From assembly GCA_964057225.1 (NCBI GenBank), contig OZ059895.1, positions 6,944,001-7,008,000 of the forward strand: a DNA stretch of 64,000 nt. The letters are read 5' to 3'. The position numbers and the translations under genes are program-made. The stretch is from Auanema rhodensis. Taxonomy: Eukaryota > Animalia > Nematoda. Below the pieces are notes generated by a model that worked only from the letters and a program-made list of their open reading frames with translations, ran no database searches and was not told the origin of the DNA. Of this stretch, positions 1 to 64,000 are shown one piece after another; position 1 is the first letter of the stretch; each line of letters starts with the position of its first letter.

Positions 1-59
1 GAAGATTCGGAAGCTTGTCTATCTCTTGACCGGAAACTTTTATTGTTCAGGCAATCTCA

Positions 60-110
60 GTCTAGAGTTTTGAATGTTCTTCTGAACAGGAATACGGTGC
101 ACGTGCCATT
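60..110 (+). promoter_or_regulatory. Candidate snRNA-type proximal sequence element (PSE) region, repeated in every unit
   Basis: Lies about -78 to -28 from the SL +1, where nematode SL/snRNA promoters place the PSE. It is among the least variable spacer segments and contains the palindrome GCACGTGC (99-106). Inferred from position and conservation, not from a motif match. Confidence 0.5.
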
Positions 111-137
111 TGCCTTGGGGTATTCAACTTCATTTTT

Positions 138-232
138 GGTTTAATTACCCAAGTTTGAGGTACTTTGATGATTCAACAACGGTTACACCTGATGTTGAAC
201 TAAATTTTGGAAAGCTCACTATATGTGAGCAA
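138..232 (+). ncRNA. SL1: Representative SL1 RNA gene (~95 nt; 3' end approximate)
   Basis: Exon 138-159 GGTTTAATTACCCAAGTTTGAG and donor GT at 160-161. Stem I has TACC/GGTA spanning the donor. Stem II is TTCAACA 172-178 / TGTTGAA 193-199. Sm site AAATTTTGGAA 202-212. Stem III is GCTCAC 214-219 / GTGAGC 225-230. Same architecture as C. elegans SL1 RNA. Confidence 0.96.
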
Positions 233-3200
233 CATTGATATTTCATCTCTCTGAAGATTCGGAAGCTTGTCTATCTCTTGACCGGAAACTTTTATTGTTC
301 AGGCAATCTCAGTCTAGAGTTTTGAATGTTCTTCTGAACAGGAATACGGTGCACGTGCCATTTGCCTTGGGGTATTCAACTTCATTTTTGGTTTAATTAC
401 CCAAGTTTGAGGTACTTTGATGATTCAACAAGGGTTACACCTGATGTTGAACTAAATTTTGGAAAGCTCACCATTGATATTTCTTCTCTCTGAACATTCG
501 GAAGCTTGTCTATCTCTTGACCGGAAATGGTTATTGTTCAGACAATCTCAGTCTAGAGTTTTGAATGTTCTTCTGAACAGGAATACGGTGCACGTGCCAT
601 TTGCCTTGGGGTATTCAACTTCATTTTTGGTTTAATTACCCAAGTTTGAGGTACTTTGATGATTCAACAACGGTTACACCTGATGTTGAACTAAATTTTG
701 GAAAGCTCACTATATGTGAGCAACATTGATATTTCATCTCTCTGAAGATTCGGAAGCTTGTCTATCTCTTGACCGGAAATGTTTATTGTTCAGACAATCT
801 CAGTCTAGAGTTTTGAATGTTCTTCTGAACAGGAATACGGTGCACGTGCCATTTGCCTTGGGGTATTCAACTTCATTTTTGGTTTAATTACCCAAGTTTG
901 AGGTACTTTGATGATTCAACAACGGTTACACCTGATGTTGAACTAAATTTTGGAAAGCTCACTATATGTGAGCAACATTGATATTTCATCTCTCTGAAGA
1001 TTCGGAAGCTTGTCTATCTCTTGACCGAAAATGGTTATTGTTCAGACAATCTCAGTCTAGAGTTTTGAATGTTCTTCTGAACAGGAATACGGTGCACGTG
1101 CCATTTGCCTTGGGGTATTCAACTTCATTTTTGGTTTAATTACCCAAGTTTGAGGTACTTTGATGATTCAACAACGGTTACACCTGATGTTGAACTAAAT
1201 TTTGGAAAGCTCACTATATGTGAGCAACATTGATATTTCATCTCTCTGAAGATTCGGAAGCTTGTCTATCTCTTGACCGGAAACTTTTATTGTTCAGGCA
1301 ATCTCAGTCTAGAGTTTTGAATGTTCTTCTGAACAGGAATACGGTGCACGTGCCATTTGCCTTGGGGTATTCAACTTCATCTTTTGTTTAATTACCCAAG
1401 TTTGAGGTACTTTGATGATTCAACAACGGTTACACCTGATGTTGAACTAAATTTTGGAAAGCTCACTATATGTGAGCAACATTGATATTTCATCTCTCTG
1501 AAGATTCGGAAGCTTGTCTATCTCTTGACCGGAAATGTTTATTGTTCAGACAATCTCAGTCTAGAGTTTTGAATGTTCTTCTGAACAGGAATACGGTGCA
1601 CGTGCCATTTGCCTTGGGGTATTCAACTTCATTTTTGGTTTAATTACCCAAGTTTGAGGTACTTTGATGATTCAACAACGGTTACACCTGATGTTGAACT
1701 AAATTTTGGAAAGCTCACTATATGTGAGCAACATTGATATTTCATCTCTCTGAAGATTCGGAAGCTTGTCTATCTCTTGACCGGAAATGTTTATTGTTCA
1801 GACAATCTCAGTCTAGAGTTTTGAATGTTCTTCTGAACAGGAATACGGTGCACGTGCCATTTGCCTTGGGGTATTCAACTTCATTTTTGGTTTAATTACC
1901 CAAGTTTGAGGTACTTTGATGATTCAACAAGGGTTACACCTGATGTTGAACTAAATTTTGGAAAGCTCACCATTGATATTTCTTCTCTCTGAACATTCGG
2001 AAGCTTGTCTATCTCTTGACCGGAAATGGTTATTGTTCAGACAATCTCAGTCTAGAGTTTTGAATGTTCTTCTGAACAGGAATACGGTGCACGTGCCATT
2101 TGCCTTGGGGTATTCAACTTCATTTTTGGTTTAATTACCCAAGTTTGAGGTACTTTGATGATTCAACAACGGTTACACCTGATGTTGAACTAAATTTTGG
2201 AAAGCTCACTATATGTGAGCAACATTGATATTTCATCTCTCTGAAGATTCGGAAGCTTGTCTATCTCTTGACCGGAAATGTTTATTGTTCAGACAATCTC
2301 AGTCTAGAGTTTTGAATGTTCTTCTGAACAGGAATACGGTGCACGTGCCATTTGCCTTGGGGTATTCAACTTCATTTTTGGTTTAATTACCCAAGTTTGA
2401 GGTACTTTGATGATTCAACAACGGTTACACCTGATGTTGAACTAAATTTTTGAAAGCTCACTATATGTGAGCAACATTGATATTTCATCTTTCTGAAGAT
2501 TCTGAAGATTCTGAAGCTTGTCTATCTCTTGACCGAAAATGGTTATTGTTCAGACAATCTCAGTCTAGAGTTTTGAATGTTCTTCTGAACAGGAATACGG
2601 TGCACGTGCCATTTGCCTTGGGGTATTCAACTTCATTTTTGGTTTAATTACCCAAGTTTGAGGTACTTTGATGATTCAACAACGGTTACACCTGATGTTG
2701 AACTAAATTTTGGAAAGCTCACTATATGTGAGCAACATTGATATTTCATCTCTCTGAAGATTCGGAAGCTTGTCTATCTCTTGACCGGAAATGTTTATTG
2801 TTCAGACAATCTCAGTCTAGAGTTTTGAATGTTCTTCTGAACAGGAATACGGTGCACGTGCCATTTGCCTTGGGGTATTCAACTTCATTTTTGGTTTAAT
2901 TACCCAAGTTTGAGGTACTTTGATGATTCAACAAGGGTTACACCTGATGTTGAACTAAATTTTGGAAAGCTCACTATATGTGAGCAACATTGATATTTCA
3001 TCTCTCTGAAGATTCGGAAGCTTGTCTATCTCTTGACCGGAAATGGTTATTGTTCAGACAATCTCAGTCTAGAGTTTTGAATGTTCTTCTGAACAGGAAT
3101 ACGGTGCACATGCCATTTGCCTTGGGGTATTCATCTTCATCTTTGGTTTAATTACCCAAGTTTGAGGTACTTTGATGATTCAACAACGGTTACACCTGAT

Positions 3201-6200
3201 GTTGAACTAAATTTTGGAAAGCTCACTATATGTGAGCAACATTGATATTTCATCTTTCTGAAGATTCTGAAGATTCTGAAGCTTGTCTATCTCTTTACCG
3301 GAAACTTTTATTGTTCAGACAATCTCAGTCTAGAGTTTTGAATGTTCTTCTGAACAGGAATACGGTGCACGTGCCATTTGCCTTGGGGGGTTCAACTTCA
3401 TTTTTGGTTTAATTACCCAAGTTTGAGGTACTTTGATGATTCAACAAGGGTTACACCTGATGTTGAACTAAATTTTGGAAAGCTCACTATATGTGAGCAA
3501 CATTGATATTTCATCTTTCTGAAGATTCGGAAGCTTGTCTATCTCTTTACCGGAAATGTTTATTGTTCAGACAATCTCAGTCTAGAGTTTTGAATGTTCT
3601 TCTGAACAGGAATACAGTGCACGTGCCATTTGCCTTGGGGTATTCAACTTCATTTTTGGTTTAATTACCCAAGTTTGAGGTACTTTGATGATTCAACAAC
3701 GGTTACACCTGATGTTGAACTAAATTTTGGAAAGCTCACTATATGTGAGCAACATTGATATTTCATCTCTCTGAAGATTCGGAAGCTTGTCTATCTCTTG
3801 ACCGGAAATGTTTATTGTTCAGACAATCTCAGTCTAGAGTTTTGAATGTTCTTCTGAACAGGAATACGGTGCACGTGCCATTTGCCTTGGGGTATTCAAC
3901 TTCATTTTTGGTTTAATTACCCAAGTTTGAGGTACTTTGATGATTCAACAACGGTTACACCTGATGTTGAACTAAATTTTGGAAAGCTCACTATATGTGA
4001 GCAACATTGATATTTCATCTTTCTGAAGATTCTGAAGATTCTGAAGCTTGTCTATCTCTTGACCGAAAATGGTTATTGTTCAGACAATCTCAGTCTAGAG
4101 TTTTGAATGTTCTTCTGAACAGGAATACGGTGCACGTGCCATTTGCCTTGGGGTATTCAACTTCATTTTTGGTTTAATTACCCAAGTTTGAGGTACTTTG
4201 ATGATTCAACAAGGGTTACACCTGATGTTGAACTAAATTTTGGAAAGCTCACTATATGTGAGCAACATTGATATTTCATCTCTCTGAAGATTCGGAAGCT
4301 TGTCTATCTCTTGACCGGAAATGGTTATTGTTCAGACAATCTCAGTCTAGAGTTTTGAATGTTCTTCTGAACAGGAATACGGTGCACATGCCATTTGCCT
4401 TGGGGTATTCATCTTCATCTTTGGTTTAATTACCCAAGTTTGAGGTACTTTGATGATTCAACAACGGTTACACCTGATGTTGAACTAAATTTTGGAAAGC
4501 TCACTATATGTGAGCAACATTGATATTTCATCTTTCTGAAGATTCTGAAGATTCTGAAGCTTGTCTATCTCTTTACCGGAAACTTTTATTGTTCAGACAA
4601 TCTCAGTCTAGAGTTTTGAATGTTCTTCTGAACAGGAATACGGTGCACGTGCCATTTGCCTTGGGGGGTTCAACTTCATTTTTGGTTTAATTACCCAAGT
4701 TTGAGGTACTTTGATGATTCAACAAGGGTTACACCTGATGTTGAACTAAATTTTGGAAAGCTCACTATATGTGAGCAACATTGATATTTCATCTTTCTGA
4801 AGATTCGGAAGCTTGTCTATCTCTTTACCGGAAACTTTTATTGTTCAGACAATCTCAGTCTAGAATTTTGAATGTTCTTCTGAACAGGAATACGGTGCAC
4901 GTGCCATTTGCCTTGGGGGGTTCAACTCCATTTTTGGTTTAATTACCCAAGTTTGAGGTACTTTGATGATTCAACAAGGGTTACACCTGATGTTGAACTA
5001 AATTTTGGAAAGCTCACTATATGTGAGCAACATTGATATTTCATCTTTCTGAAGATTCGGAAGCTTGTCTATCTCTTTACCGGAAATGTTTATTGTTCAG
5101 ACAATCTCAGTCTAGAGTTTTGAATGTTCTTCTGAACAGGAATACGGTGCACGTGCCATTTGCCTTGGGGTATTCAACTTCATTTTTGGTTTAATTACCC
5201 AAGTTTGAGGTACTTTGATGATTCAACAAGGGTTACACCTGATGTTGAACTAAATTTTGGAAAGCTCACTATATGTGAGCAACATTGATATTTCATCTCT
5301 CTGAAGATTCGGAAGCTTGTCTATCTCTTGACCGGAAACTTTTATTGTTCAGACAATCTCAGTCTAGAGTTTTGAATGTTCTTCTGAACAGGAATACGGT
5401 GCACGTGCCATTTGCCTTGGGGTATTCAACTTAATTTTTGGTTTAATTACCCAAGTTTGAGGTACTTTGATGATTCAACAAGGGTTACACCTGATGTTGA
5501 ACTAAATTTTGGAAAGCTCACTATATGTGAGCAACATTGATATTTCATCTCTCTGAAGATTCGGAAGCTTGTCTATCTCTTTACCGGAAATGTTTATTGT
5601 TCAGACAATCTCAGTCTAGAGTTTTGAATGTTCTTCTGAACAGGAATACAGTGCACGTGCCATTTGCCTTGGGGTATTCAACTTCATTTTTGGTTTAATT
5701 ACCCAAGTTTGAGGTACTTTGATGATTCAGCAACGGTTACACCTGATGTTGAACTAAATTTTGGAAAGCTCACTATATGTGAGCAACATTGATATTCCAT
5801 CTCTCTGAAGATTCTGAAGCTTGTCTATCTCTTGACCGGAAATGTTTATTGTTCAGACAATCTCAGTCTAGAGTTTTGAATGTTCTTCTGAACAGGAATA
5901 CGGTGCACGTGCCATTTGCCTTGGGGTATTCAACTTCATTTTTGGTTTAATTACCCAAGTTTGAGGTACTTTGATGATTCAACAACGGTTACACCTGATG
6001 TTGAACTAAATTTTGGAAAGCTCACTATATGTGAGCAACATTGATATTCCATCTCTCTGAAGATTCTGAAGCTTGTCTATCTCTTGACCGAAAATGGTTA
6101 TTGTTCAGACAATCTCAGTCTAGAGTTTTGAATGTTCTTCTGAACAGGAATACGGTGCACGTGCCATTTGCCTTGGGGTATTCAACTTCATTTTTGGTTT

Positions 6201-9200
6201 AATTACCCAAGTTTGAGGTACTTTGATGATTCAACAAGGGTTACACCTGATGTTGAACTAAATTTTGGAAAGCTCACTATATGTGAGCAACATTGATATT
6301 TCATCTCTCTGAAGATTCGGAAGCTTGTCTATCTCTTGACCGGAAATGGTTATTGTTCAGACAATCTCAGTCTAGAGTTTTGAATGTTCTTCTGAACAGG
6401 AATACGGTGCACATGCCATTTGCCTTGGGGTATTCATCTTCATCTTTGGTTTAATTACCCAAGTTTGAGGTACTTTGATGATTCAACAACGGTTACACCT
6501 GATGTTGAACTAAATTTTGGAAAGCTCAGTATATGTGAGCAACATTGATATTTCATCTCTCTGAAGATTCGGAAGCTTGTCTATCTCTTGACCGGAAACT
6601 TTTATTGTTCAGACAATCTCAGTCTAGAGTTATGAATGTTCTTCTGAACAGGAATACGGTGCACGTGCCATTTGCCTTGGGGTATTCAACTTAATTTTTG
6701 GTTTAATTACCCAAGTTTGAGGTACTTTGATGATTCAACAAGGGTTACACCTGATGTTGAACTAAATTTTGGAAAGCTCACTATATGTGAGCAACATTGA
6801 TATTTCATCTTTCTGAAGATTCGGAAGCTTGTCTATCTCTTTACCGGAAATGTTTATTGTTCAGACAATCTCAGTCTAGAGTTTTGAATGTTCTTCTGAA
6901 CAGGAATACAGTGCACGTGCCATTTGCCTTGGGGTATTCAACTTCATTTTTGGTTTAATTACCCAAGTTTGAGGTACTTTGATGATTCAACAACGGTTAC
7001 ACCTGATGTTGAACTAAATTTTGGAAAGCTCACTATATGTGAGCAACATTGATATTTCATCTCTCTGAAGATTCGGAAGCTTGTCTATCTCTTGACCGGA
7101 AATGTTTATTGTTCAGACAATCTCAGTCTAGAGTTTTGAATGTTCTTCTGAACAGGAATACGGTGCACGTGCCATTTGCCTTGGGGTATTCAACTTCATT
7201 TTTGGTTTAATTACCCAAGTTTGAGGTACTTTGATGATTCAACAACGGTTACACCTGATGTTGAACTAAATTTTGGAAAGCTCACTATATGTGAGCAACA
7301 TTGATATTTCATCTTTCTGAAGATTCTGAAGATTCTGAAGCTTGTCTATCTCTTGACCGAAAATGGTTATTGTTCAGACAATCTCAGTCTAGAGTTTTGA
7401 ATGTTCTTCTGAACAGGAATACGGTGCACGTGCCATTTGCCTTGGGGTATTCAACTTCATTTTTGGTTTAATTACCCAAGTTTGAGGTACTTTGATGATT
7501 CAACAACGGTTACACCTGATGTTGAACTAAATTTTGGAAAGCTCACTATATGTGAGCAACATTGATATTTCATCTCTCTGAAGATTCGGAAGCTTGTCTA
7601 TCTCTTGACCGGAAATGTTTATTGTTCAGACAATCTCAGTCTAGAGTTTTGAATGTTCTTCTGAACAGGAATACGGTGCACGTGCCATTTGCCTTGGGGT
7701 ATTCAACTTCATTTTTGGTTTAATTACCCAAGTTTGAGGTACTTTGATGATTCAACAAGGGTTACACCTGATGTTGAACTAAATTTTGGAAAGCTCACTA
7801 TATGTGAGCAACATTGATATTTCATCTCTCTGAAGATTCGGAAGCTTGTCTATCTCTTGACCGGAAATGGTTATTGTTCAGACAATCTCAGTCTAGAGTT
7901 TTGAATGTTCTTCTGAACAGGAATACGGTGCACATGCCATTTGCCTTGGGGTATTCATCTTCATCTTTGGTTTAATTACCCAAGTTTGAGGTACTTTGAT
8001 GATTCAACAACGGTTACACCTGATGTTGAACTAAATTTTGGAAAGCTCACTATATGTGAGCAACATTGATATTTCATCTCTCTGAAGATTCGGAAGCTTG
8101 TCTATCTCTTGACCGGAAACTTTTATTGTTCAGACAATCTCAGTCTAGAGTTTTGAATGTTCTTCTGAACAGGAATACGGTGCACGTGCCATTTGCCTTG
8201 GGGTATTCAACTTAATTTTTGGTTTAATTACCCAAGTTTGAGGTACTTTGATGATTCAACAAGGGTTACACCTGATGTTGAACTAAATTTTGGAAAGCTC
8301 ACTATATGTGAGCAACATTGATATTTCATCTTTCTGAAGATTCGGAAGCTTGTCTATCTCTTTACCGGAAATGTTTATTGTTCAGACAATCTCAGTCTAG
8401 AGTTTTGAATGTTCTTCTGAACAGGAATACAGTGCACGTGCCATTTGCCTTGGGGTATTCAACTTCATTTTTGGTTTAATTACCCAAGTTTGAGGTACTT
8501 TGATGATTCAACAACGGTTACACCTGATGTTGAACTAAATTTTGGAAAGCTCACTATATGTGAGCAACATTGATATTTCATCTCTCTGAAGATTCGGAAG
8601 CTTGTCTATCTCTTGACCGGAAATGTTTATTGTTCAGACAATCTCAGTCTAGAGTTTTGAATGTTCTTCTGAACAGGAATACGGTGCACGTGCCATTTGC
8701 CTTGGGGTATTCAACTTCATTTTTGGTTTAATTACCCAAGTTTGAGGTACTTTGATGATTCAACAACGGTTACACCTGATGTTGAACTAAATTTTGGAAA
8801 GCTCACTATATGTGAGCAACATTGATATTTCATCTTTCTGAAGATTCTGAAGATTCGGAAGCTTGTCTATCTCTTGACCGGAAATGTTTATTGTTCAGAC
8901 AATCTCAGTCTAGAGTTTTGAATGTTCTTCTGAACAGGAATACGGTGCACGTGCCATTTGCCTTGGGGTATTCAACTTCATTTTTGGTTTAATTACCCAA
9001 GTTTGAGGTACTTTGATGATTCAACAAGGGTTACACCTGATGTTGAACTAAATTTTGGAAAGCTCACTATATGTGAGCAACATTGATATTTCATCTCTCT
9101 GAAGATTCGGAAGCTTGTCTATCTCTTGACCGGAAACTTTTATTGTTCAGACAATCTCAGTCTAGAGTTTTGAATGTTCTTCTGAACAGGAATACAGTGC

Positions 9201-12200
9201 ACGTGCCATTTGCCTTGGGGTATTCAACTTCATTTTTGGTTTAATTACCCAAGTTTGAGGTACTTTGATGATTCAGCAACGGTTACACCTGATGTTGAAC
9301 TAAATTTTGGAAAGCTCACTATATGTGAGCAACATTGATATTTCATCTCTCTGAAGATTCGGAAGCTTGTCTATCTCTTGACCGGAAATGTTTATTGTTC
9401 AGACAATCTCAGTCTAGAGTTTTGAATGTTCTTCTGAACAGGAATACAGTGCACGTGCCATTTGCCTTGGGGTATTCAACTTCATTTTTGGTTTAATTAC
9501 CCAAGTTTGAGGTACTTTGATGATTCAACAAGGGTTACACCTGATGTTGAACTAAATTTTGGAAAGCTCACTATATGTGAGCAACATTGATATTTCATCT
9601 CTCTGAAGATTCGGAAGCTTGTCTATCTCTTGACCGGAAACTTTTATTGTTCAGACAATCTCAGTCTAGAGTTTTGAATGTTCTTCTGAACAGGAATACA
9701 GTGCACGTGCCATTTGCCTTGGGGTATTAAACTTCATTTTTGGTTTAATTACCCAAGTTTGAGGTACTTTGATGATTCAGCAACGGTTACACCTGATGTT
9801 GAACTAAATTTTGGAAAGCTCACTATATGTGAGCAACATTGATATTTCATCTCTCTGAAGATTCGGAAGCTTGTCTATCTCTTGACCGGAAATGTTTATT
9901 GTTCAGACAATCTCAGTCTAGAGTTTTGAATGTTCTTCTGAACAGGAATACGGTGCACGTGCCATTTGCCTTGGGGTATTCAACTTCATTTTTGGTTTAA
10001 TTACCCAAGTTTGAGGTACTTTGATGATTCAACAAGGGTTACACCTGATGTTGAACTAAATTTTGGAAAGCTCACTATATGTGAGCAACATTGATATTCC
10101 ATCTCTCTGAAGATTCTGAAGCTTGTCTATCTCTTGACCGAAAATGGTTATTGTTCAGACAATCTCAGTCTAGAGTTTTGAATGTTCTTCTGAACAGGAA
10201 TACGGTGCACGTGCCATTTGCCTTGGGGTATTCAACTTCATTTTTGGTTTAATTACCCAAGTTTGAGGTACTTTGATGATTCAACAAGGGTTACACCTGA
10301 TGTTGAACTAAATTTTGGAAAGCTCACTATATGTGAGCAACATTGATATTTCATCTCTCTGAAGATTCGGAAGCTTGTCTATCTCTTGACCGGAAATGGT
10401 TATTGTTCAGACAATCTCAGTCTAGAGTTTTGAATGTTCTTCTGAACAGGAATACGGTGCACATGCCATTTGCCTTGGGGTATTCATCTTCATCTTTGGT
10501 TTAATTACCCAAGTTTGAGGTACTTTGATGATTCAACAAGGGTTACACCTGATGTTGAACTAAATTTTGGAAAGCTCACTATATGTGAGCAACATTGATA
10601 TTCCATCTTTCTGAAGATTCGGAAGCTTGTCTATCTCTTGACCGGAAATGGTTATTGTTCAGACAATCTCAGTCTAGAGTTTTGAATGTTCTTCTGAACA
10701 GGAATACGGTGCACGTGCCATTTGCCTTGGGGTATTCAACTTCATTTTTGGTTTAATTACCCAAGTTTGAGGTACTTTGATGATTCAACAAGGGTTACAC
10801 CTGATGTTGAACTAAATTTTGGAAAGCTCACTATATGTGAGCAACATTGATATTCCATCTCTCTGAAGATTCGGAAGCTTGTCTATCTCTTGATCGGAAA
10901 TGTTTATTGTTCAGACAATCTCAGTCTAGAGTTTTGAATGTTCTTCTGAACAGGAATACGGTGCACGTGCCATTTGCCTTGGGGTATTCAACTTCATTTT
11001 TGGTTTAATTACCCAAGTTTGAGGTACTTTGATGATTCAACAACGGTTACACCTGATGTTGAACTAAATTTTGGAAAGCTCACTATATGTGAGCAACATT
11101 GATATTCCATCTTTCTGAAGATTCTGAAGCTTGTCTATCTCTTGATCGGAAATGTTTATTGTTCAGACAATCTCAGTCTAGAGTTTTGAATGTTCTTCTG
11201 AACAGGAATACGGTGCACGTGCCATTTGCCTTGGGGTATTCAACTTCATTTTTGGTTTAATTACCCAAGTTTGAGGTACTTTGATGATTCAACAACGGTT
11301 ACACCTGATGTTGAACTAAATTTTGGAAAGCTCACTATATGTGAGCAACATTGATATTTCATCTCTCTGAAGATTCGGAAGCTTGTCTATCTCTTGACCG
11401 GAAATGGTTATTGTTCAGACAATCTCAGTCTAGAGTTTTGAATGTTCTTCTGAACAGGAATACGGTGCACGTGCCATTTGCCTTGGGGTATTCAACTTCA
11501 TCTTTGGTTTAAATACCCAAGTTTGAGGTACTTTGATGATTCAACAAGGGTTACACCTGATGTTGAACTAAATTTTGGAAAGCTCACTATAAATTTTGGA
11601 AAGCTCACCATTGATATTTCTTCTCTCTGAACATTCGGAAGCTTGTCTATCTCTTGACCGAAAATGGTTATTGTTCAGACAATCTCAGTCTAGAGTTTTG
11701 AATGTTCTTCTGAACAGGAAAACGGTGCACGTGCCATTTGCCTTGGGGTATTCAACTTCATTTTTGGTTTAATTACCCAAGTTTGAGGTACTTTGATGAT
11801 TCAACAAGGGTTACACCTGATGTTGAACTAAATTTTGGAAAGCTCACTATATGTGAGCAACATTGATATTTCATCTTTCTGAAGATTCTGAAGATTCTGA
11901 AGCTTGTCTATCTCTTGACCGAAAATGGTTATTGTTCAGACAATCTCAGTCTAGAGTTTTGAATGTTCTTCTGAACAGGAATACGGTGCACATGCCATTT
12001 GCCTTGGGGTATTCAACTTCATTTTTGGTTTAATTACCCAAGTTTGAGGTACTTTGATGATTCAACAACGGTTACACCTGATGTTGAACTAAATTTTGGA
12101 AAGCTCACTATATGTGAGCAACATTGATATTCCATCTCTCTGAAGATTCAGAAGCTTGTCTATCTCTTGACCGGAAATGGTTATTGTTCAGACAATCTCA

Positions 12201-51671: not shown

Positions 51672-51706
51672 GATTTTAAAAAAAAATCATGCATTTTGAT
51701 CCATGC

Positions 51707-51852
51707 GCAGGCTCGAGAGCCTGCCTCGGGAGGAAAAGTATATTTTTAACAGCTGACTCCGAAAATATGATTTTGACAGCTGGCGCCCCCAAAAGTATGT
51801 TTTGAGCAGCTAACGCCTTCAAAAGTATGTTCTTTGCAACTGTTTGGGGGCG
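51707..51852. repeat. GC-rich hairpin plus ~4 degenerate 27-30-bp repeats (AAAAGTATGTTTT..CAGCTG)
   Basis: GCAGGCTC-GA-GAGCCTGC at 51707-51724. CAGCTG/CAGCTA/CAACTG near 51750, 51777, 51807 and 51837. CGCCCCCAAA (51784) is inverted at TTTGGGGGCG (51843). Confidence 0.65.
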
Positions 51853-51862
51853 TGGTTAGTAA

Positions 51863-53646: not shown

Positions 53647-53774
53647 AAAGTATACAAACCGGAAGGTTAAGCAATAATGTTTTGAAATCTTTTTCTTGTA
53701 TTATTAATGTTATTTGATGTTGAATATTTCACGATTGTATGAGATTTATGTTATTTGGGTTTTTCATGGGGACA

Positions 53775-54248
53775 TGTTATTTGTAAAATGTATGATTGTA
53801 ACTCTATATTTAACCTTTTTTTTATTCATTTGATCTAGTCAGTCATCTACACAACCTAGTCGCGGCCAGTGTCTCGTATAAACGAGAGGATCGAAGAAAT
53901 GTGATAAACAACGAAACAGATGTAACACTTTGGTAATAATAAACGCAACAGATGTGCAGTTTTTTGGTAGATAAGATTAGACAAAGAACGAGACGGGCAG
54001 TATCGAAAATGAAAAGAAGAGGGATCCGATTTTTGACGACGATAGAGAACGGTTGCTGATATTGTTGTTGTGTATTTTGAGCTAGATAAACCTTTGTTAT
54101 TAAATTCGACTTCTACATTAATATAAAGACTACATTACTCCTATTCACTGCCCTACTGATTTATTATTGTGATTATTATGATTCCACCTAACTACCACTG
54201 GTCTCTGTGATCACGGAACTGACGGAGGACTACAAGAATCGAATCGAA
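53775..54248 (+). mobile_element. Probable 3' LTR (right end uncertain)
   Basis: Begins TGTTA directly after a purine-rich PPT-like GGGGACA (53768-53774), downstream of env. TATAAA at 53877 and AATAAA at 53938, with a possible ...TACA end at 54234. There is no second LTR to confirm it. Confidence 0.5.
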
Positions 54249-57200
54249 GAAGAATCTGAAGCTTGTCTATCTCTCGATCGAAAAAGTTCATTGTTCAGAC
54301 AATCTCAGTCTAGAGTTTTGAATGTTTTTCTGAACAGGAATACGGTGCACGTGCCATTTGCCTTCGAGTATTCATCTTCATCTTTGGTTTAATTACCCAA
54401 GTTTGAGGTAGTTTGATGATTCAACAAGGGTTACACCTTATGTTGAACTAAATTTTGGAAAGCTCACTATATGTGAGCAACATTGATATTTCATCTTTCT
54501 GAAGATTCTGAAGCTTGTCTATCTCTCGACCGAAAAAGTTCATTGTTCAGACAATCTCAGTCTAGAGTTTTGAATGTTTTTCTGAACAGGAATACGGTGC
54601 ACGTGCCATTTGCCTTCGAGTATTCATCTTCATCTTTGGTTTAATTACCCAAGTTTGAGGTACTTTGATGATTCAACAAGGGTTACACCTTATGTTGAAC
54701 TAAATTTTGGAAAGCTCACTATATGTGAGCAACATTGATATTTCATCTTTCTGAAGATTCTGAAGCTTGTCTATCTCTTGACCGAAAATGTTCATTGTTC
54801 AGACAATCTCAGTCTAGAGTTTTGAATGTTCTTCTGAACAGGAATACGGTGCACGTGCCATTTGCCTTCGAGTATTCATCTTCATCTTTGGTTTAATTAC
54901 CCAAGTTTGAGGTAGTTTGATGATTCAACAAGGGTTACACCTTATGTTGAACTAAATTTTGGAAAGCTCACTATATGTGAGCAACATTGATATTTCATCT
55001 TTCTGAAGATTCTGAAGCTTGTCTATCTCTCGACCGAAAAAGTTCATTGTTCAGACAATCTCAGTCTAGAGTTTTGAATGTTTTTCTGAACAGGAATACG
55101 GTGCACGTGCCATTTGCCTTCGAGTATTCATCTTCATCTTTGGTTTAATTACCCAAGTTTGAGGTACTTTGATGATTCAACAAGGGTTACACCTTATGTT
55201 GAACTAAATTTTGGAAAGCTCACTATATGTGAGCAACATTGATATTTCATCTTTCTGAAGATTCTGAAGCTTGTCTATCTCTTGACCGAAAATGTTCATT
55301 GTTCAGACAATCTCAGTCTAGAGTTTTGAATGTTCTTCTGAACAGGAATACGGTGCACGTGCCATATATCTTGGGGTATTCATCATCATATTTGGTTTAA
55401 TTACCCAAGTTTGAGGTACTTTGATGATTCAACAAGGGTTACACCTGATGTTGAACTAAATTTTGGAAAGCTCACTATATGTGAGCAACATTGATATTTC
55501 ATCTTTCTGAAGATTCTGAAGCTTGTCTATCTCTTGACCGAAAATGTTCATTGTTCAGACAATCTCAGTCTAGAGTTTTGAATGTTCTTCTGAACAGGAA
55601 TACGGTGCACGTGCCATATATCTTGGGGTATTCATCATCATATTTGGTTTAATTACCCAAGTTTGAGGTACTTTGATGATTCAACAAGGGTTACACCTGA
55701 TGTTGAACTAAATTTTGGAAAGCTCACTATATGTGAGCAACATTGATATTTCATCTCTCTGAACATTCTGAAGCTTGTCTATCTCTTGACCGAAAATGTT
55801 CATTGTTCAGACAATCTCAGTCTAGAATTTTGAATGTTCTTCTGAACAGGAATACGGTGCACGTGCCATTTGCCTTGGGGTATTCATCTTCATCTTTGGT
55901 TTAATTACCCAAGTTTGAGGTACTTTGATGATTCAACAAGGGTTACACCTGATGTTGAACTAAATTTTGGAAAGCTCACTATATGTGAGCAACATTGATA
56001 TTTCATCTCTCTGAACATTCTGAAGCTTGTCTATCTCTTGACCGAAAATGTTCATTGTTCAGACAATCTCAGTCTAGAGTTTTGAATGTTCTTCTGAACA
56101 GGAATACGGTGCACGTGCCATATATCTTGGGGTATTCATCATCATATTTGGTTTAATTACCCAAGTTTGAGGTACTTTGATGATTCAACAAGGGTTACAC
56201 CTGATGTTGAACTAAATTTTGGAAAGCTCACTATATGTGAGCAACATTGATATTTCATCTTTCTGAAGATTCTGAAGCTTGTCTATCTCTCGACCGAAAA
56301 AGTTCATTGTTCAGACAATCTCAGTCTAGAGTTTTGAATGTTCTTCTGAACAGGAATACGGTGCACGTGCCATTTGCCTTCGAGTATTCATCTTCATCTT
56401 TGGTTTAATTACCCAAGTTTGAGGTACTTTGATGATTCAACAAGGGTTACACCTTATGTTGAACTAAATTTTGGAAAGCTCACTATATGTGAGCAACATT
56501 GATATTCCATCTTTCTGAAGATTCTGAAGCTTGTCTATCTCTTGACCGAAAATGTTCATTGTTCAGACAATCTCAGTCTAGAGTTTTGAATGTTCTTCTG
56601 AACAGGAATACGGTGCACGTGCCATATATCTTGGGATATTCATCATCATATTTGGTTTAATTACCCAAGTTTGAGGTACTTTGATGATTCAACAAGGGTT
56701 ACACCTGATGTTGAACTAAATTTTGGAAAGCTCACTATATGTGAGCAACATTGATATTTCATCTTTCTGAAGATTCTGAAGCTTGTCTATCTCTTGACCG
56801 AAAATGTTCATTGTTCAGACAATCTCAGTCTAGAGTTTTGAATGTTCTTCTGAACAGGAATACGGTGCACGTGCCATATATCTTGGGGTATTCATCATCA
56901 TATTTGGTTTAATTACCCAAGTTTGAGGTACTTTGATGATTCAACAAGGGTTACACCTGATGTTGAACTAAATTTTGGAAAGCTCACTATATGTGAGCAA
57001 CATTGATATTTCATCTTTCTGAAGATTCGGAAGCTTGTCTATCTCTTTACCGGAAACTTTTATTGTTCAGACAATCTCAGTCTAGAGTTTTGAATGTTTT
57101 TCTGAACAGGAATACGGTGCACGTGCCATTTGCCTTCGAGTATTCATCTTCATCTTTGGTTTAATTACCCAAGTTTGAGGTAGTTTGATGATTCAACAAG

Positions 57201-60200
57201 GGTTACACCTTATGTTGAACTAAATTTTGGAAAGCTCACTATATGTGAGCAACATTGATATTTCATCTTTCTGAAGATTCTGAAGCTTGTCTATCTCTCG
57301 ACCGAAAAAGTTCATTGTTCAGACAATCTCAGTCTAGAGTTTTGAATGTTTTTCTGAACAGGAATACGGTGCACGTGCCATTTGCCTTCGAGTATTCATC
57401 TTCATCTTTGGTTTAATTACCCAAGTTTGAGGTACTTTGATGATTCAACAAGGGTTACACCTTATGTTGAACTAAATTTTGGAAAGCTCACTATATGTGA
57501 GCAACATTGATATTTCATCTTTCTGAAGATTCGGAAGCTTGTCTATCTCTTTACCGGAAACTTTTATTGTTCAGACAATCTCAGTCTAGAGTTTTGAATG
57601 TTCTTCTGAACAGGAATACGGTGCACGTGCCATTTGCCTTCGAGTATTCATCTTCATCTTTGGTTTAATTACCCAAGTTTGAGGTACTTTGATGATTCAA
57701 CAAGGGTTACACCTTATGTTGAACTAAATTTTGGAAAGCTCACTATATGTGAGCAACATTGATATTTCATCTTTCTGAAGATTCTGAAGCTTGTCTATCT
57801 CTTGACCGAAAATGTTCATTGTTCAGACAATCTCAGTCTAGAGTTTTGAATGTTCTTCTGAACAGGAATACGGTGCACGTGCCATATATCTTGGGGTATT
57901 CATCATCATATTTGGTTTAATTACCCAAGTTTGAGGTACTTTGATGATTCAACAAGGGTTACACCTGATGTTGAACTAAATTTTGGAAAGCTCACTATAT
58001 GTGAGCAACATTGATATTTCATCTCTCTGAACATTCTGAAGCTTGTCTATCTCTTGACCGAAAATGTTCATTGTTCAGACAATCTCAGTCTAGAATTTTG
58101 AATGTTCTTCTGAACAGGAATACGGTGCACGTGCCATTTGCCTTGGGGTATTCATCTTCATCTTTGGTTTAATTACCCAAGTTTGAGGTACTTTGATGAT
58201 TCAACAAGGGTTACACCTGATGTTGAACTAAATTTTGGAAAGCTCACTATATGTGAGCAACATTGATATTTCATCTTTCTGAAGATTCTGAAGCTTGTCT
58301 ATCTCTCGACCGAAAAAGTTCATTGTTCAGACAATCTCAGTCTAGAGTTTTGAATGTTCTTCTGAACAGGAATACGGTGCACGTGCCATTTGCCTTCGAG
58401 TATTCATCTTCATCTTTGGTTTAATTACCCAAGTTTGAGGTACTTTGATGATTCAACAAGGGTTACACCTTATGTTGAACTAAATTTTGGAAAGCTCACT
58501 ATATGTGAGCAACATTGATATTCCATCTTTCTGAAGATTCTGAAGCTTGTCTATCTCTTGACCGAAAATGTTCATTGTTCAGACAATCTCAGTCTAGAGT
58601 TTTGAATGTTCTTCTGAACAGGAATACGGTGCACGTGCCATATATCTTGGGATATTCATCATCATATTTGGTTTAATTACCCAAGTTTGAGGTACTTTGA
58701 TGATTCAACAAGGGTTACACCTGATGTTGAACTAAATTTTGGAAAGCTCACTATATGTGAGCAACATTGATATTTCATCTTTCTGAAGATTCTGAAGCTT
58801 GTCTATCTCTTGACCGAAAATGTTCATTGTTCAGACAATCTCAGTCTAGAGTTTTGAATGTTCTTCTGAACAGGAATACGGTGCACGTGCCATATATCTT
58901 GGGGTATTCATCATCATATTTGGTTTAATTACCCAAGTTTGAGGTACTTTGATGATTCAACAAGGGTTACACCTGATGTTGAACTAAATTTTGGAAAGCT
59001 CACTATATGTGAGCAACATTGATATTTCATCTTTCTGAAGATTCGGAAGCTTGTCTATCTCTTTACCGGAAACTTTTATTGTTCAGACAATCTCAGTCTA
59101 GAGTTTTGAATGTTCTTCTGAACAGGAATACGGTGCACGTGCCATTTGCCTTCGAGTATTCATCTTCATCTTTGGTTTAATTACCCAAGTTTGAGGTACT
59201 TTGATGATTCAACAAGGGTTACACCTGATGTTGAACTAAATTTTGGAAAGCTCACTATATGTGAGCAACATTGATATTTCATCTTTCTGAACATTCTGAA
59301 GCTTGTCTATCTCTTGACCGAAAATGTTCATTGTTCAGACAATCTCAGTCTAGAATTTTGAATGTTCTTCTGAACAGGAATACGGTGCACGTGCCATTTG
59401 CCTTGGGGTATTCATCTTCATCTTTGGTTTAATTACCCAAGTTTGAGGTACTTTGATGATTCAACAAGGGTTACACCTGATGTTGAACTAAATTTTGGAA
59501 AGCTCACTATATGTGAGCAACATTGATATTTCATCTTTCTGAAGATTCTGAAGCTTGTCTATCTCTTGACCCAAAATGTTCATTGTTCAGACAATCTCAG
59601 TCTAGAGTTTTGAATGTTCTTCTGAACAGGAATACGGTGCACGTGCCATTTGCCTTGGGGTATTCATCTACATCTTTGGTTTAATTACCCAAGTTTGAGG
59701 TACTTTGATGATTCAACAAGGGTTACACCTGATGTTGAACTAAATTTTGGAAAGCTCACTATATGTGAGCAACATTGATATTCCATCTCTCTGAAGATTC
59801 GGAAGCTTGTCTATCTCTTTACCGGAAACTTTTATTGTTCAGACAATCTCAGTCTAGAGTTTTGAATGTTCTTCTGAACAGGAATACGGTGCACGTGCCA
59901 TATATCTTGGGGTATTCATCATCATATTTGGTTTAATTACCCAAGTTTGAGGTACTTTGATGATTCAACAAGGGTTACACCTGATGTTGAACTAAATTTT
60001 GGAAAGCTCACTATATGTGAGCAACATTGATATTTCATCTCTCTGAACATTCTGAAGCTTGTCTATCTCTTGACCGAAAATGTTCATTGTTCAGACAATC
60101 TCAGTCTAGAATTTTGAATGTTCTTCTGAACAGGAATACGGTGCACGTGCCATTTGCCTTGGGGTATTCATCTTCATCTTTGGTTTAATTACCCAAGTTT

Positions 60201-63200
60201 GAGGTACTTTGATGATTCAACAAGGGTTACACCTGATGTTGAACTAAATTTTGGAAAGCTCACTATATGTGAGCAACATTGATATTTCATCTTTCTGAAG
60301 ATTCTGAAGCTTGTCTATCTCTTGACCCAAAATGTTCATTGTTCAGACAATCTCAGTCTAGAGTTTTGAATGTTCTTCTGAACAGGAATACGGTGCACGT
60401 GCCATATATCTTGGGGTATTCATCATCATCTTTGGTTTAATTACCCAAGTTTGAGGTACTTTGATGATTCAACAAGGGTTACACCTGATGTTGAACTAAA
60501 TTTTGGAAAGCTCACTATATGTGAGCAACATTGATATTTCATCTTTCTGAAGATTCTGAAGCTTGTCTATCTCTCGACCGAAAAAGTTCATTGTTCAGAC
60601 AATCTCAGTCTAGAGTTTTGAATGTTCTTCTGAACAGGAATACGGTGCACGTGCCATTTGCCTTCGAGTATTCATCTTCATCTTTGGTTTAATTACCCAA
60701 GTTTGAGGTACTTTGATGATTCAACAAGGGTTACACCTTATGTTGAACTAAATTTTGGAAAGCTCACTATATGTGAGCAACATTGATATTCCATCTTTCT
60801 GAAGATTCTGAAGCTTGTCTATCTCTTGACCGAAAATGTTCATTGTTCAGACAATCTCAGTCTAGAGTTTTGAATGTTCTTCTGAACAGGAATACGGTGC
60901 ACGTGCCATATATCTTGGGATATTCATCATCATATTTGGTTTAATTACCCAAGTTTGAGGTACTTTGATGATTAAACAAGGGTTACACCTGATGTTGAAC
61001 TAAATTTTGGAAAGCTCACTATATGTGAGCAACATTGATATTTCATCTTTCTGAAGATTCTGAAGCTTGTCTATCTCTTGACCGAAAATGTTCATTGTTC
61101 AGACAATCTCAGTCTAGAGTTTTGAATGTTCTTCTGAACAGGAATACGGTGCACGTGCCATATATCTTGGGGTATTCATCATCATATTTGGTTTAATTAC
61201 CCAAGTTTGAGGTACTTTGATGATTCAACAAGGGTTACACCTGATGTTGAACTAAATTTTGGAAAGCTCACTATATGTGAGCAACATTGATATTTCATCT
61301 TTCTGAAGATTCGGAAGCTTGTCTATCTCTTTACCGGAAACTTTTATTGTTCAGACAATCTCAGTCTAGAGTTTTGAATGTTCTTCTGAACAGGAATACG
61401 GTGCACGTGCCATTTGCCTTCGAGTATTCATCTTCATCTTTGGTTTAATTACCCAAGTTTGAGGTACTTTGATGATTCAACAAGGGTTACACCTGATGTT
61501 GAACTAAATTTTGGAAAGCTCACTATATGTGAGCAACATTGATATTTCATCTTTCTGAACATTCTGAAGCTTGTCTATCTCTTGACCGAAAATGTTCATT
61601 GTTCAGACAATCTCAGTCTAGAATTTTGAATGTTCTTCTGAACAGGAATACGGTGCACGTGCCATTTGCCTTGGGGTATTCATCTTCATCTTTGGTTTAA
61701 TTACCCAAGTTTGAGGTACTTTGATGATTCAACAAGGGTTACACCTGATGTTGAACTAAATTTTGGAAAGCTCACTATATGTGAGCAACATTGATATTTC
61801 ATCTTTCTGAAGATTCTGAAGCTTGTCTATCTCTTGACCCAAAATGTTCATTGTTCAGACAATCTCAGTCTAGAGTTTTGAATGTTCTTCTGAACAGGAA
61901 TACGGTGCACGTGCCATTTGCCTTGGGGTATTCATCTACATCTTTGGTTTAATTACCCAAGTTTGAGGTACTTTGATGATTCAACAAGGGTTACACCTGA
62001 TGTTGAACTAAATTTTGGAAAGCTCACTATATGTGAGCAACATTGATATTCCATCTCTCTGAAGATTCGGAAGCTTGTCTATCTCTTTACCGGAAACTTT
62101 TATTGTTCAGACAATCTCAGTCTAGAGTTTTGAATGTTCTTCTGAACAGGAATACGGTGCACGTGCCATATATCTTGGGGTATTCATCATCATATTTGGT
62201 TTAATTACCCAAGTTTGAGGTACTTTGATGATTCAACAAGGGTTACACCTGATGTTGAACTAAATTTTGGAAAGCTCACTATATGTGAGCAACATTGATA
62301 TTTCATCTCTCTGAACATTCTGAAGCTTGTCTATCTCTTGACCGAAAATGTTCATTGTTCAGACAATCTCAGTCTAGAATTTTGAATGTTCTTCTGAACA
62401 GGAATACGGTGCACGTGCCATTTGCCTTGGGGTATTCATCTTCATCTTTGGTTTAATTACCCAAGTTTGAGGTACTTTGATGATTCAACAAGGGTTACAC
62501 CTGATGTTGAACTAAATTTTGGAAAGCTCACTATATGTGAGCAACATTGATATTTCATCTTTCTGAAGATTCTGAAGCTTGTCTATCTCTTGACCCAAAA
62601 TGTTCATTGTTCAGACAATCTCAGTCTAGAGTTTTGAATGTTCTTCTGAACAGGAATACGGTGCACGTGCCATTTGCCTTGGGGTATTCATCTACATCTT
62701 TGGTTTAATTAAGCAAGTTTGAGGTACTTTGATGATTCAACAAGGGTTACACCTGATGTTGAACTAAATTTTGGAAAGCTCACTATATGTGAGCAACATT
62801 GATATTTCATCTTTCTGAAGATTCTGAAGCTTGTCTATCTCTTGACCCAAAATGTTCATTGTTCAGACAATCTCAGTCTAGAGTTTTGAATGTTCTTCTG
62901 AACAGGAATACGGTGCACGTGCCATTTGCCTTGGGGTATTCATCTACATCTTTGGTTTAATTACCCAAGTTTGAGGTACTTTGATGATTCAACAAGGGTT
63001 ACACCTGATGTTGAACTAAATTTTGGAAAGCTCACTATATGTGAGCAACATTGATATTCCATCTCTCTGAAGATTCGGAAGCTTGTCTATCTCTTTACCG
63101 GAAACTTTTATTGTTCAGACAATCTCAGTCTAGAGTTTTGAATGTTCTTCTGAACAGGAATACGGTGCACGTGCCATTTGCCTTGGGGTATTCATCTTCA

Positions 63201-64000
63201 TGTTTGGTTTAATTACCCAAGTTTGAGGTACTTTGATGATTCAACAAGGGGGTCACCTGATGTTGAACTAAATTTTGGAAAGCTCACTATATGTGAGCAA
63301 CATTGATATTTCATCTTTCTGAAGATTCTGAAGCTTGTCTATCTCTTGACCCAAAATGTTCATTGTTCAGACAATCTCAGTCTAGAGTTTTGAATGTTTT
63401 TCTGAACAGGAATACGGTGCACGTGCCATTTGCCTTCGAGTATTCATCTTCATCTTTGGTTTAATTACCCAAGTTTGAGGTACTTTGATGATTCAACAAG
63501 GGTTACACCTTATGTTGAACTAAATTTTGGAAAGCTCACTATATGTGAGCAACATTGATATTTCATCTTTCTGAAGATTCTGAAGCTTGTCTATCTCTTG
63601 ACCGAAAATGTTCATTGTTCAGACAATCTCAGTCTAGAGTTTTGAATGTTTTTCTGAACAGGAATACGGTGCACGTGCCATTTGCCTTCGAGTATTCATC
63701 TTCATCTTTGGTTTAATTACCCAAGTTTGAGGTACTTTGATGATTCAACAAGGGTTACACCTTATGTTGAACTAAATTTTGGAAAGCTCACTATATGTGA
63801 GCAACATTGATATTTCATCTTTCTGAAGATTCTGAAGCTTGTCTATCTCTTGATCGAAAATGTTCATTGTTCAGACAATCTCAGTCTAGAGTTTTGAATG
63901 TTTTTCTGAACAGGAATACGGTGCACGTGCCATTTGCCTTCGAGTATTCATCTTCATCTTTGGTTTAATTACCCAAGTTTGAGGTACTTTGATGATTCAA
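54249..64000 (+). ncRNA. SL1: Tandem array of SL1 RNA genes, 252-bp unit, 39 copies (right array; open at window end)
   Basis: Exons run from 54386 to 63962, exactly 38 x 252. Spacer haplotypes are distinct (AAAATGTTCATT, CCTTCGAG, CCATATATC), with a CCTTATG allele in stem II. Confidence 0.97.

What the first reader, a model, noticed from the sequence alone, without database searches (positions are those of the whole stretch)
1..64000. The 'satellite' is an ultra-compact, 5S-free mega-array of ~235 SL1 trans-splicing leader RNA genes
Seen: each 252-bp monomer has an SL1 exon, GT donor, three stems and an Sm site, with only ~157 bp of spacer, and the array runs off both edges. Known: in C. elegans and many other nematodes SL1 genes sit in a larger (~1 kb in C. 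elegans) repeat together with 5S rDNA. I see no 5S sequence here. Inference: this is a dedicated SL1 locus uncoupled from 5S that evolves like satellite DNA. All promoter and 3'-end signals must fit in ~157 bp. Repeat-maskers would hide it.
Basis: partly seen in the sequence, partly recalled or inferred. Interest (0 to 1): 0.85.

Follow-up and report, generated by a model that had tools for sequence, protein, structure and literature searches.

The report
Tandem array of SL1 genes
This apparent 252-base satellite is a long head-to-tail array of about 235 intact-looking roundworm SL1 spliced-leader RNA genes with no 5S gene; the reading is correct, but root-knot nematodes already have a published SL-gene satellite of this kind.

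Summary
The window has 233 direct and 2 inverted 252-bp units. Of the 233 direct units, 221 carry the exact 22-nt SL1 leader, 230 a GT donor and 229 an Sm site, and a typical unit folds into three stem-loops. No 5S signal appears at any threshold.

That stretch holds the two inverted units and about 5 kb of foreign DNA, including a decayed retrovirus-like envelope gene.

Rfam's SL1 model scores each unit 55.5 bits, below its cut-off of 75. That cut-off is too strict: only 1 of 56 soil-nematode loci with the same leader passes it, and 20 sampled loci score 36.6-65.7 bits.

New single-unit mutations are as dense in the gene as in the spacer. Variants that spread to 3 or more units are about three-fold rarer in the gene and in a block at -96 to -30. 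This suggests constraint on the RNA and a compact promoter.

Expression was not shown. The only RNA-labelled run looks DNA-contaminated.

The kind is known. Meloidogyne MelSat01 is a 295-bp SL1b satellite, and SL1 is unlinked from 5S in Pristionchus and Oscheius. The scan had already flagged similar SL1 arrays elsewhere in this genome, which other scan notes assign to Auanema rhodense. Whether this array is discarded from body cells remains open.

The parts
1..48858 (+). Left domain of the SL1 gene array, 193.6 units of 252 bp (subfamilies A/B/C)
   Evidence: TRF; leader count; subfamily map
881..902 (+). 22-nt SL1 leader exon of a representative unit (unit = 881-1132)
   Evidence: Exact match; Rfam SL1 alignment
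903..976 (+). Intron part of the SL RNA: GT donor 903-904, stem-loop I closing at 911, stem-loop II 915-942, Sm site 946-954, stem-loop III 957-973, predicted 3' end near 976
   Evidence: Fold; Rfam full-length alignment 1-103; motif coordinates
977..1036 (+). Variable 3' flank (unit 97-156): 17 of 60 sites carry variants spread to 3 or more units
1037..1103 (+). Constrained upstream block, -96 to -30 of the next gene (unit 157-223): 7 of 67 sites with spread variants. Candidate snRNA-type promoter. Contains a 9-bp inverted repeat (1038-1046 and 1076-1084) and the palindrome GCACGTGC (1094-1101).
   Evidence: promoter function is inferred
1104..1132 (+). Variable proximal stretch, -29 to -1 (unit 224-252): 17 of 29 sites with spread variants. 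5 of the 6 differences seen in the contig of organism E (run X14) fall here.
48859..49297 (-). About 1.7 inverted units with two SL1-type genes (48,897-48,992 and 49,149-49,244) whose leader ends ...GTTTAAG
   Evidence: 53.8 bits each
49298..54248 (.). Non-array insertion: a 1.3-kb segment bounded by 26-bp inverted repeats (49,308-50,643), a 28-bp AT-rich minisatellite (51,520-51,687), and a decayed phlebovirus-Gc-like envelope gene in pieces (51,902-53,646) followed by non-coding DNA up to the array
   Evidence: (PF07245 63.7 bits)
54249..64000 (+). Right domain of the SL1 gene array, 38.7 units (subfamilies D/E/F). Its 6 consensus differences from the left domain all lie in the two variable spacer zones.

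Best explanation
The window is part of a dedicated tandem array of nematode SL1 spliced-leader RNA genes, one gene per 252-bp unit, with no 5S rRNA gene. Each unit would give a roughly 96-nt RNA: the 22-nt leader, a GU donor held in stem-loop I, stem-loop II, a single-stranded Sm site (AAUUUUGGA) and stem-loop III. By analogy with studied nematode SL RNA genes, RNA polymerase II would transcribe it from a small snRNA-type promoter. The RNA would then assemble with Sm proteins and donate its leader to pre-mRNAs by trans-splicing. This step is inferred, not shown. The promoter most likely lies in the low-variation block at -96 to -30. The array is homogenised and reshuffled like a satellite by unequal exchange, which produces subfamilies and higher-order repeats. 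Variants that hit the RNA or the upstream block seldom spread.
For: Leader, donor, Sm site and stems are present in nearly all 233 direct units. Rfam SL1 aligns end to end (model 1-103) at 55.5 bits, E=1e-8. That score sits inside the 36.6-65.7 bit range of 20 independent soil-nematode SL1 genes, several of them 5S-linked. Private alleles per site are similar in gene and spacer (16/96 against 19/156). Sites with alleles spread to 3 or more units number 8/96 in the gene against 41/156 in the spacer (Fisher p=5e-4), and 7/67 in the -96..-30 block against 34/89 in the rest of the spacer (p=9e-5). Five of the seven spread variants in the intron part lie between the stems, in the apical region of stem-loop II (the inner CGG/CUG helix, which the majority G at position 43 cannot form), or keep a G-U pair in stem III; the other two, three units each, fall on predicted pairs of stems I and II. 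All 6 consensus differences between the two array domains fall outside the gene and the block. No 5S, tRNA or ORF of 90 aa or more lies in the array. The tandem junction and unit are present in public runs under three further organism labels.
Against: There is no direct evidence of transcription. The only run guessed to be RNA gives a 166-nt contig from -25 to +45 around the gene at depth 3. It also gives contigs containing upstream flanks of other SL1 genes, which looks like DNA carry-over. Rfam's curated threshold is not reached. The block boundaries in the constraint test were chosen after seeing the data, and the sites are not fully independent. The genome holds other SL1 gene families, so this array could be redundant (loose ends; scan notes). 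No recognised promoter motif could be matched, because no other snRNA genes of this species were available to compare.
Confidence: 0.8

Rival explanations
1. It is a silent SL-derived satellite. An SL1 gene was captured and amplified as a repeat unit, the copies look intact only because amplification is recent and homogenisation is fast, and the array is heterochromatic and possibly germline-restricted, contributing little or no SL RNA.
For: No clean transcript evidence. Satellite-like dynamics with higher-order repeats, inverted units and retroelement debris. Other SL1 gene families exist in the same organisms (scan notes). If the organism is Auanema rhodense, most large tandem-repeat blocks are discarded from body cells and are proposed to accumulate where selection is weak (bioRxiv 10.64898/2026.08.27.747507).
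Against: Spread variants are depleted in the gene and in an upstream block, while new private mutations are not. Pure drift and homogenisation do not predict that. 221 of 233 leaders are exact.
Confidence: 0.17
2. The primary role is chromosomal rather than RNA supply, for example pairing, a boundary, or a retained structural block, with the SL1 gene as a passenger in the repeat unit.
For: Array size far exceeds the roughly 110 SL1 copies that serve C. elegans (PMC4138322). The preprint speculates that chromosome-specific repeat blocks aid homologue pairing.
Against: The constrained parts of the unit coincide with the RNA gene and the promoter-position block, not with an arbitrary motif. Nothing here points to a protein-binding repeat function.
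Confidence: 0.05
3. It is an assembly artefact, or a 5S gene is hidden in the unit.
For: Long homogeneous arrays are error-prone to assemble.
Against: The unit, its variants and the head-to-tail junction occur in independent public runs from seven studies. The array has structured subfamilies. 5S was sought at permissive thresholds with a working positive control.
Confidence: 0.01

Closest known systems
Meloidogyne MelSat01 / INC satellite (Mi-SL1b spliced-leader gene satellite), PMC9673304
   Same: A short tandem repeat classed as satellite DNA. Each unit holds one SL1-type RNA gene of about 90 bp and no 5S. Variability is low in the SL exon and Sm site and higher in the spacer. It sits at several chromosomal sites and is conserved across congeners.
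   Different: The unit is 295 bp, not 252. The leader is the variant ...GTTTAAG, and Mi-SL1b is reported as the less-used leader, whereas this array carries the canonical SL1. The intron and spacer show no evident resemblance by eye, so the two arrays probably arose independently. The lineage also differs: Tylenchina against, probably, Rhabditina.
C. elegans 5S rDNA-SL1 repeat (about 110 copies of a 1-kb unit)
   Same: Identical 22-nt leader, tandem organisation, about one hundred or more copies, and the same RNA architecture (as cited in PMC4138322 and PMC1657053; Rfam alignment).
   Different: The C. elegans unit is about four times longer and carries a 5S gene. Here no 5S is present.
5S-unlinked SL1 genes of Pristionchus pacificus and Oscheius tipulae
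   Same: SL1 genes are not next to 5S (PMC4138322; PMC8022731).
   Different: Those genes are reported as dispersed or not clustered. Here they form a dense homogeneous array.
Trypanosomatid mini-exon (SL RNA) gene arrays
   Same: Dedicated tandem arrays of short SL RNA gene units, each with its own Pol II promoter, and known targets of site-specific retroelements. This comparison rests on general knowledge and was not tested here.
   Different: Unrelated leader and RNA sequence, and a different eukaryotic lineage.
Tandem non-coding-RNA arrays in eliminated DNA of Auanema rhodense (5S, tRNA, U2), bioRxiv 10.64898/2026.08.27.747507
   Same: If the organism lead is right, this is the same genome and the same theme of highly repeated small-RNA genes inside tandem-repeat blocks.
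   Different: The preprint's main text does not mention spliced-leader genes. Its four FISH probe sequences (AT-1, XR-1, XT-1, XT-2) are absent from this window. Whether this array is eliminated is unknown.

Membership tests
Nematode SL1 spliced-leader RNA gene (Rfam RF00198) | 22-nt SL1 leader at the 5' end | tested here: met
   221 of 233 direct units are exact; the rest differ by 1-3 bases
Nematode SL1 spliced-leader RNA gene (Rfam RF00198) | GU splice donor directly after the leader, held in stem-loop I | tested here: met
   GT in 230 of 233 units. Stem I is formed in the MFE fold, and the Rfam alignment keeps 8 of 10 pairs.
Nematode SL1 spliced-leader RNA gene (Rfam RF00198) | Single-stranded Sm site (AAUUUUGGA) between stem-loops II and III | tested here: met
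   AATTTTGG in 229 of 233 units. It is unpaired between two hairpins and is invariant across 22 aligned SL1 genes except for two single-base changes.
Nematode SL1 spliced-leader RNA gene (Rfam RF00198) | Covariance-model score at or above the curated gathering score (75 bits) | tested here: not met
   55.5 bits, E=1e-8, full-length alignment. In the control, only 1 of 56 soil-nematode loci with the exact leader passes, and 20 sampled loci score 36.6-65.7 bits. The threshold, not the gene, is the limiting factor.
Nematode SL1 spliced-leader RNA gene (Rfam RF00198) | Transcribed, trimethylguanosine-capped, Sm-bound, and leader found on mRNAs | not testable with these tools
   Only assembled contigs were available. 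The one run guessed to be RNA is ambiguous. The leader is canonical, so mRNA 5' ends cannot be assigned to this array.
5S rDNA-SL1 linked repeat (C. elegans/Ascaris/Brugia type) | A 5S rRNA gene in the same repeat unit | tested here: not met
   No 5S at gathering score in 64 kb, nor at E<=10 or E<=1 in sampled stretches. The positive control works.
Satellite DNA | Long head-to-tail array of near-identical short units with subfamilies or higher-order repeats | tested here: met
   96-97% identity over 58.6 kb. There are 15 subfamily clusters with repeated multi-unit patterns and two distinct domains.
snRNA-type Pol II promoter (proximal sequence element near -50) | Recognisable PSE shared with other snRNA genes of the species | tested here: inconclusive
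   A low-variation block at -96..-30 lies in the right position. It shows no similarity to the upstream motifs of soil-nematode SL1 genes, and no snRNA genes of this species were available.

The most novel reading that the evidence does not exclude
This 252-bp 'satellite' may be one of the large tandem-repeat families of the Auanema rhodense germline genome that was not recognised as SL1 genes, because Rfam's threshold misses them. It may lie in a germline-restricted block. In that case programmed DNA elimination at the 12-cell stage would strip body cells of most of their SL1 genes and leave only the small SL1 clusters in the retained gene-rich DNA. The mirror outcome would also be informative: if the array is one of the few large repeat blocks kept in body cells, being an SL1 gene array would explain why it is kept.
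Probability: 0.4. Interest if true: 0.55.

Novelty: new member of a known kind. Interest (0 to 1): 0.3.

Why it matters
The result is practical rather than conceptual.

(1) Annotation is missing these genes. Hundreds of intact SL1 genes go unreported at Rfam's curated SL1 threshold, and the same threshold misses nearly every SL1 gene in a soil-metagenome control. SL1 gene counts in nematode genome papers that rely on it are probably too low, and some 'satellites' are probably gene arrays.

(2) The 252-bp unit is a natural minimal SL RNA transcription unit. The variation map narrows the candidate promoter to about 67 bp (-96 to -30), which can be tested directly.

(3) The organism probably discards about 60% of its germline DNA from body cells. 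Whether such SL1 arrays are discarded or kept bears on whether the discarded repeat blocks contain working genes.

Tried and rejected
- **Rfam at gathering score over the window:** no hit. I did not take this as evidence against SL1 after calibrating on 56 independent loci.
- **Expression check by laying public runs:** only assembled contigs were served. The single run guessed to be RNA also contains upstream flanks of SL1 genes, so I treat it as uninformative.
- **Consensus structure from a MAFFT alignment of 22 SL1 genes:** this recovered only the invariant stem I, because stems II and III are misaligned, so it gave no covariation evidence.
- **Promoter motif by comparison with soil-nematode SL1 upstream regions:** clade-specific motifs appear near -57 to -47 (for example CATCAAAGG or ACTATGGGT), but none matches this unit.
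- **Bacterial-type promoter and terminator scan:** not relevant to a eukaryotic snRNA-type gene.
- **Organism identification from the envelope-like ORF by protein search:** no hit within the tool's length limits. A full-text search for part of the SL RNA sequence found no paper.
- **Matching the unit to named Auanema repeat families:** the four published FISH probes are absent from the window. The table of repeat families is held only as an image.
- **Placing the window relative to elimination break sites:** scan notes put candidate sites 1.94 Mb before and 12.05 Mb after the window, which fits either a central eliminated block or a retained block, so this stays undecided.
Full report
**What is in the window**

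Tandem Repeats Finder reports a 252-bp period from 1 to 48,858 (193.6 copies, 97% matches) and from 54,249 to 64,000 (38.7 copies, 96%). A pattern count finds 233 leader sequences on the + strand, 221 of them the exact 22-nt nematode SL1. The commonest spacing between them is 252 bp (187 of 232 intervals). Two more units lie on the - strand with the leader ending ...GTTTAAG.

The array breaks at 48,858, just after a leader and GTA. About 1.7 inverted units follow (48,859-49,297), then 4.95 kb of non-array DNA (49,298-54,248). The array itself has no ORF of 90 aa or more and no tRNA.

**Is each unit an SL1 gene?**

A typical unit (881-1132) has these parts:
- the leader at 881-902
- GT at 903-904
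- a first hairpin pairing the leader with the donor region
- a second hairpin at 915-942
- a single-stranded AAUUUUGGA at 946-954
- a third hairpin at 957-973

Across the 233 direct units, GT is present in 230 and the Sm core in 229. All five strict feature patterns are met in 193. Most failures are an A-to-G change in stem III that still gives a G-U pair.

Rfam gives no hit at curated thresholds. At E-value thresholds, each unit aligns end to end to SL1 (RF00198, model 1-103) at 55.5 bits, E=1e-8, against a gathering score of 75.

To judge that shortfall, I fetched 56 metagenome contigs, mostly from soil, that carry the exact leader plus GTA. Only one passes the SL1 gathering score. Twenty sampled loci score 36.6-65.7 bits, including genes sitting next to 5S in classical linked repeats. 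So 55.5 bits is typical of SL1 genes outside the model's seed species, and the curated cut-off is simply too strict.

**Is 5S absent?**

No 5S match appears at gathering score in the 64 kb, at E<=10 in 1-1,100, or at E<=1 across the break region. The same tool found 5S at 100 bits or more for full-length copies in about 14 of the 56 control loci, sometimes together with U2 and U6. The negative result is therefore meaningful.

Scan notes report a 5S array paired with U4 elsewhere in this genome (s1-422442). I did not check that.

**Gene or dead satellite?**

I aligned 231 units and separated private alleles (in 2 units or fewer) from alleles that have spread to 3 or more units.

| Zone (unit positions) | Position relative to next gene | Sites with spread alleles |
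|---|---|---|
| Gene (1-96) | the RNA itself | 8 of 96 |
| 3' flank (97-156) | just after the gene | 17 of 60 |
| Upstream block (157-223) | -96 to -30 | 7 of 67 |
| Proximal stretch (224-252) | -29 to -1 | 17 of 29 |

- Private alleles are no rarer in the gene than in the spacer: 16 over 96 sites against 19 over 156.
- Sites with spread alleles number 8 of 96 in the gene against 41 of 156 in the whole spacer (Fisher p=5e-4).
- The upstream block has 7 of 67 such sites against 34 of 89 in the rest of the spacer (p=9e-5). I chose the block limits after seeing the data.
- Five of the seven spread variants in the intron part lie between the stems, in the apical region of stem-loop II, or keep a G-U pair in stem III. 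That apical region is a three-pair inner helix in the fold, which the majority base at position 43 cannot form. The other two, in three units each, fall on predicted pairs of stems I and II.
- All six consensus differences between the left and right array domains fall in the two variable zones.
- A contig from another organism label (run X14, organism E) covers -81 to +58 with six differences. Five lie within -29 to -4 and the sixth is a site in the apical region of stem-loop II that is also polymorphic here.

This is the pattern expected if mutations arise evenly but changes to the RNA, or to a promoter-position block, fail to spread. It argues for working genes, now or until recently. It does not replace transcript evidence.

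**Transcript evidence**

I could not obtain any. Only assembled contigs were served. The one run guessed to be RNA gives a 166-nt contig from -25 to +45 around the gene at depth 3. It also gives contigs carrying upstream flanks of other SL1 genes, which suggests DNA carry-over.

The same output shows a second SL1 gene family in these organisms. It shares the first 40 nt and then diverges (loose end at 920).

**Likely mechanism (inferred)**

By analogy with studied nematode SL RNA genes, each unit is a self-contained Pol II snRNA-type gene. Its promoter must fit within the roughly 156-bp spacer, and I place it in the -96 to -30 block. That block contains a 9-bp inverted repeat and the palindrome GCACGTGC. 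The RNA would bind Sm proteins at the AAUUUUGGA site and donate its leader in trans-splicing.

I could not match a known promoter element. Upstream motifs in the soil-nematode genes differ by clade, and none resembles this unit.

**Satellite behaviour**

Units cluster into 15 subfamilies. Multi-unit patterns repeat along the array, for example a block of about 13 units repeated near 30-37 kb. Mean differences between units rise slowly with distance. The domain right of the break is a separate subfamily set.

Length variants include:
- eight 261-bp units with a tripled 9-mer
- units with a duplicated 21-nt stretch covering the Sm site

**The break region**

The foreign DNA includes ORF pieces matching the phlebovirus glycoprotein G2 fusion domain (PF07245, 63.7 bits) and, weakly, its C-terminal domain. 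Stop codons interrupt the ORF. This is a decayed envelope gene of an endogenous retrovirus-like element. I describe it only and searched its pieces separately.

Scan notes report intact elements of this type a few kb beyond the window in the same array (s1-373309, s1-373222).

**Comparison with what is known**

- *C. elegans* keeps about 110 SL1 genes in a 1-kb repeat with 5S (as cited in PMC4138322 and PMC1657053).
- SL1 is not near 5S in *P. pacificus* (PMC4138322) and is not clustered with 5S in *O. tipulae* (PMC8022731).
- The most abundant *Meloidogyne* satellite, MelSat01/INC, is a 295-bp unit that is the Mi-SL1b spliced-leader gene. It shows the same picture of a conserved exon and Sm site with a variable spacer (PMC9673304). 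Its printed consensus shows the leader variant ...GTTTAAG and a spacer with no evident resemblance to this one by eye.
- In my metagenome control, five contigs carry two SL1 genes 978-1,100 bp apart with no 5S.

A 5S-free SL1 array that behaves as a satellite is therefore a known kind. This one is a new example with the canonical leader and a somewhat shorter unit.

The scan had already flagged the same idea on other DNA of this genome: a like array 184 kb upstream (s1-393698), a 291-bp variant-leader array (s1-387508, s1-387522), and small clusters 7-8 Mb away (s1-378839, s1-422445, s1-422403).

**Organism and the open question**

Other scan notes assign this genome to *Auanema rhodense* (s1-391223, s1-407072). 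I could not verify that from the window.

A 2026 preprint (bioRxiv 10.64898/2026.08.27.747507) reports that this worm discards about 61% of its germline genome from body cells. The discarded DNA is mostly tandem repeats with 167-504-nt units and includes 5S, tRNA and U2 arrays. Its main text does not mention spliced-leader genes. Its four FISH probes do not match this window.

Scan notes place candidate break sites 1.94 Mb before and 12.05 Mb after the window, with genes from about +7 Mb. That fits either a central eliminated block or a retained block. Whether these SL1 genes are thrown away in body cells is the one question here that could raise the interest of the finding. Read depth or FISH can answer it.

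**Verdict**

Novelty is modest: a new member of a known kind.

Noticed in passing
window 48859-49297 (- strand): Two inverted SL1-type genes carry the leader variant ...GTTTAAG (G20A). The printed Meloidogyne MelSat01/Mi-SL1b consensus shows the same single change, probably by coincidence. The inverted units resemble the right-hand array subfamily.
   Followed up: partly
window 51902-53646 (+ strand): A decayed envelope-like gene lies in pieces separated by stops. It matches the phlebovirus glycoprotein G2 fusion domain (PF07245, 63.7 bits) and weakly its C-terminal domain (PF19019, 20.1 bits, below the cut-off). It is probably the 3' part of an endogenous retrovirus-like (BEL/Pao-type) element lodged in the SL1 array.
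   Followed up: partly
window 49308-49333 and 50618-50643: A 26-bp inverted repeat pair (88% complementary) bounds a 1.3-kb segment next to the inverted units. It may be a small DNA transposon. Short exon-like ORFs inside gave no Pfam hit.
   Followed up: no
window 51520-51687: AT-rich 28-bp minisatellite, about 6 copies, inside the insertion.
   Followed up: no
window 11569-11608 and 16122-16182: Two units carry a 21-nt stretch covering the Sm site and the start of stem III that is duplicated or triplicated. These genes would have two or three Sm sites.
   Followed up: no
window 2491-2516, 3256-3281, 4021-4046 and five more: Eight 261-bp units carry a tripled 9-mer (TTCTGAAGA) in the 3' flank. 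The first three lie 765 bp apart, a three-unit higher-order repeat.
   Followed up: partly
window 881-920 (loose end at 920 in runs X9, X10, X13): A second SL1 gene family in the same organisms shares the leader and the first 18 intron bases, then continues with a different stem-loop II and its own Sm site. Its flanks differ from this unit.
   Followed up: no
L006 and L008 (soil metagenome contigs): Single contigs carry SL1, 5S, U2 and U6 genes together within 2.4-4 kb. This is a multi-snRNA/5S cluster in unidentified soil nematodes.
   Followed up: no
L020, L031, L032, L041, L043 (soil metagenome contigs): Each contig carries two SL1 genes 978-1,100 bp apart with no 5S gene at gathering score. 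This looks like a 5S-free SL1 tandem repeat of about 1 kb in a common soil nematode.
   Followed up: partly
L001-L056 and the window: Rfam's SL1 gathering score (75 bits) is passed by only 1 of 56 loci carrying the exact SL1 leader and donor. Routine Infernal annotation will therefore under-count SL1 genes in most nematodes.
   Followed up: yes
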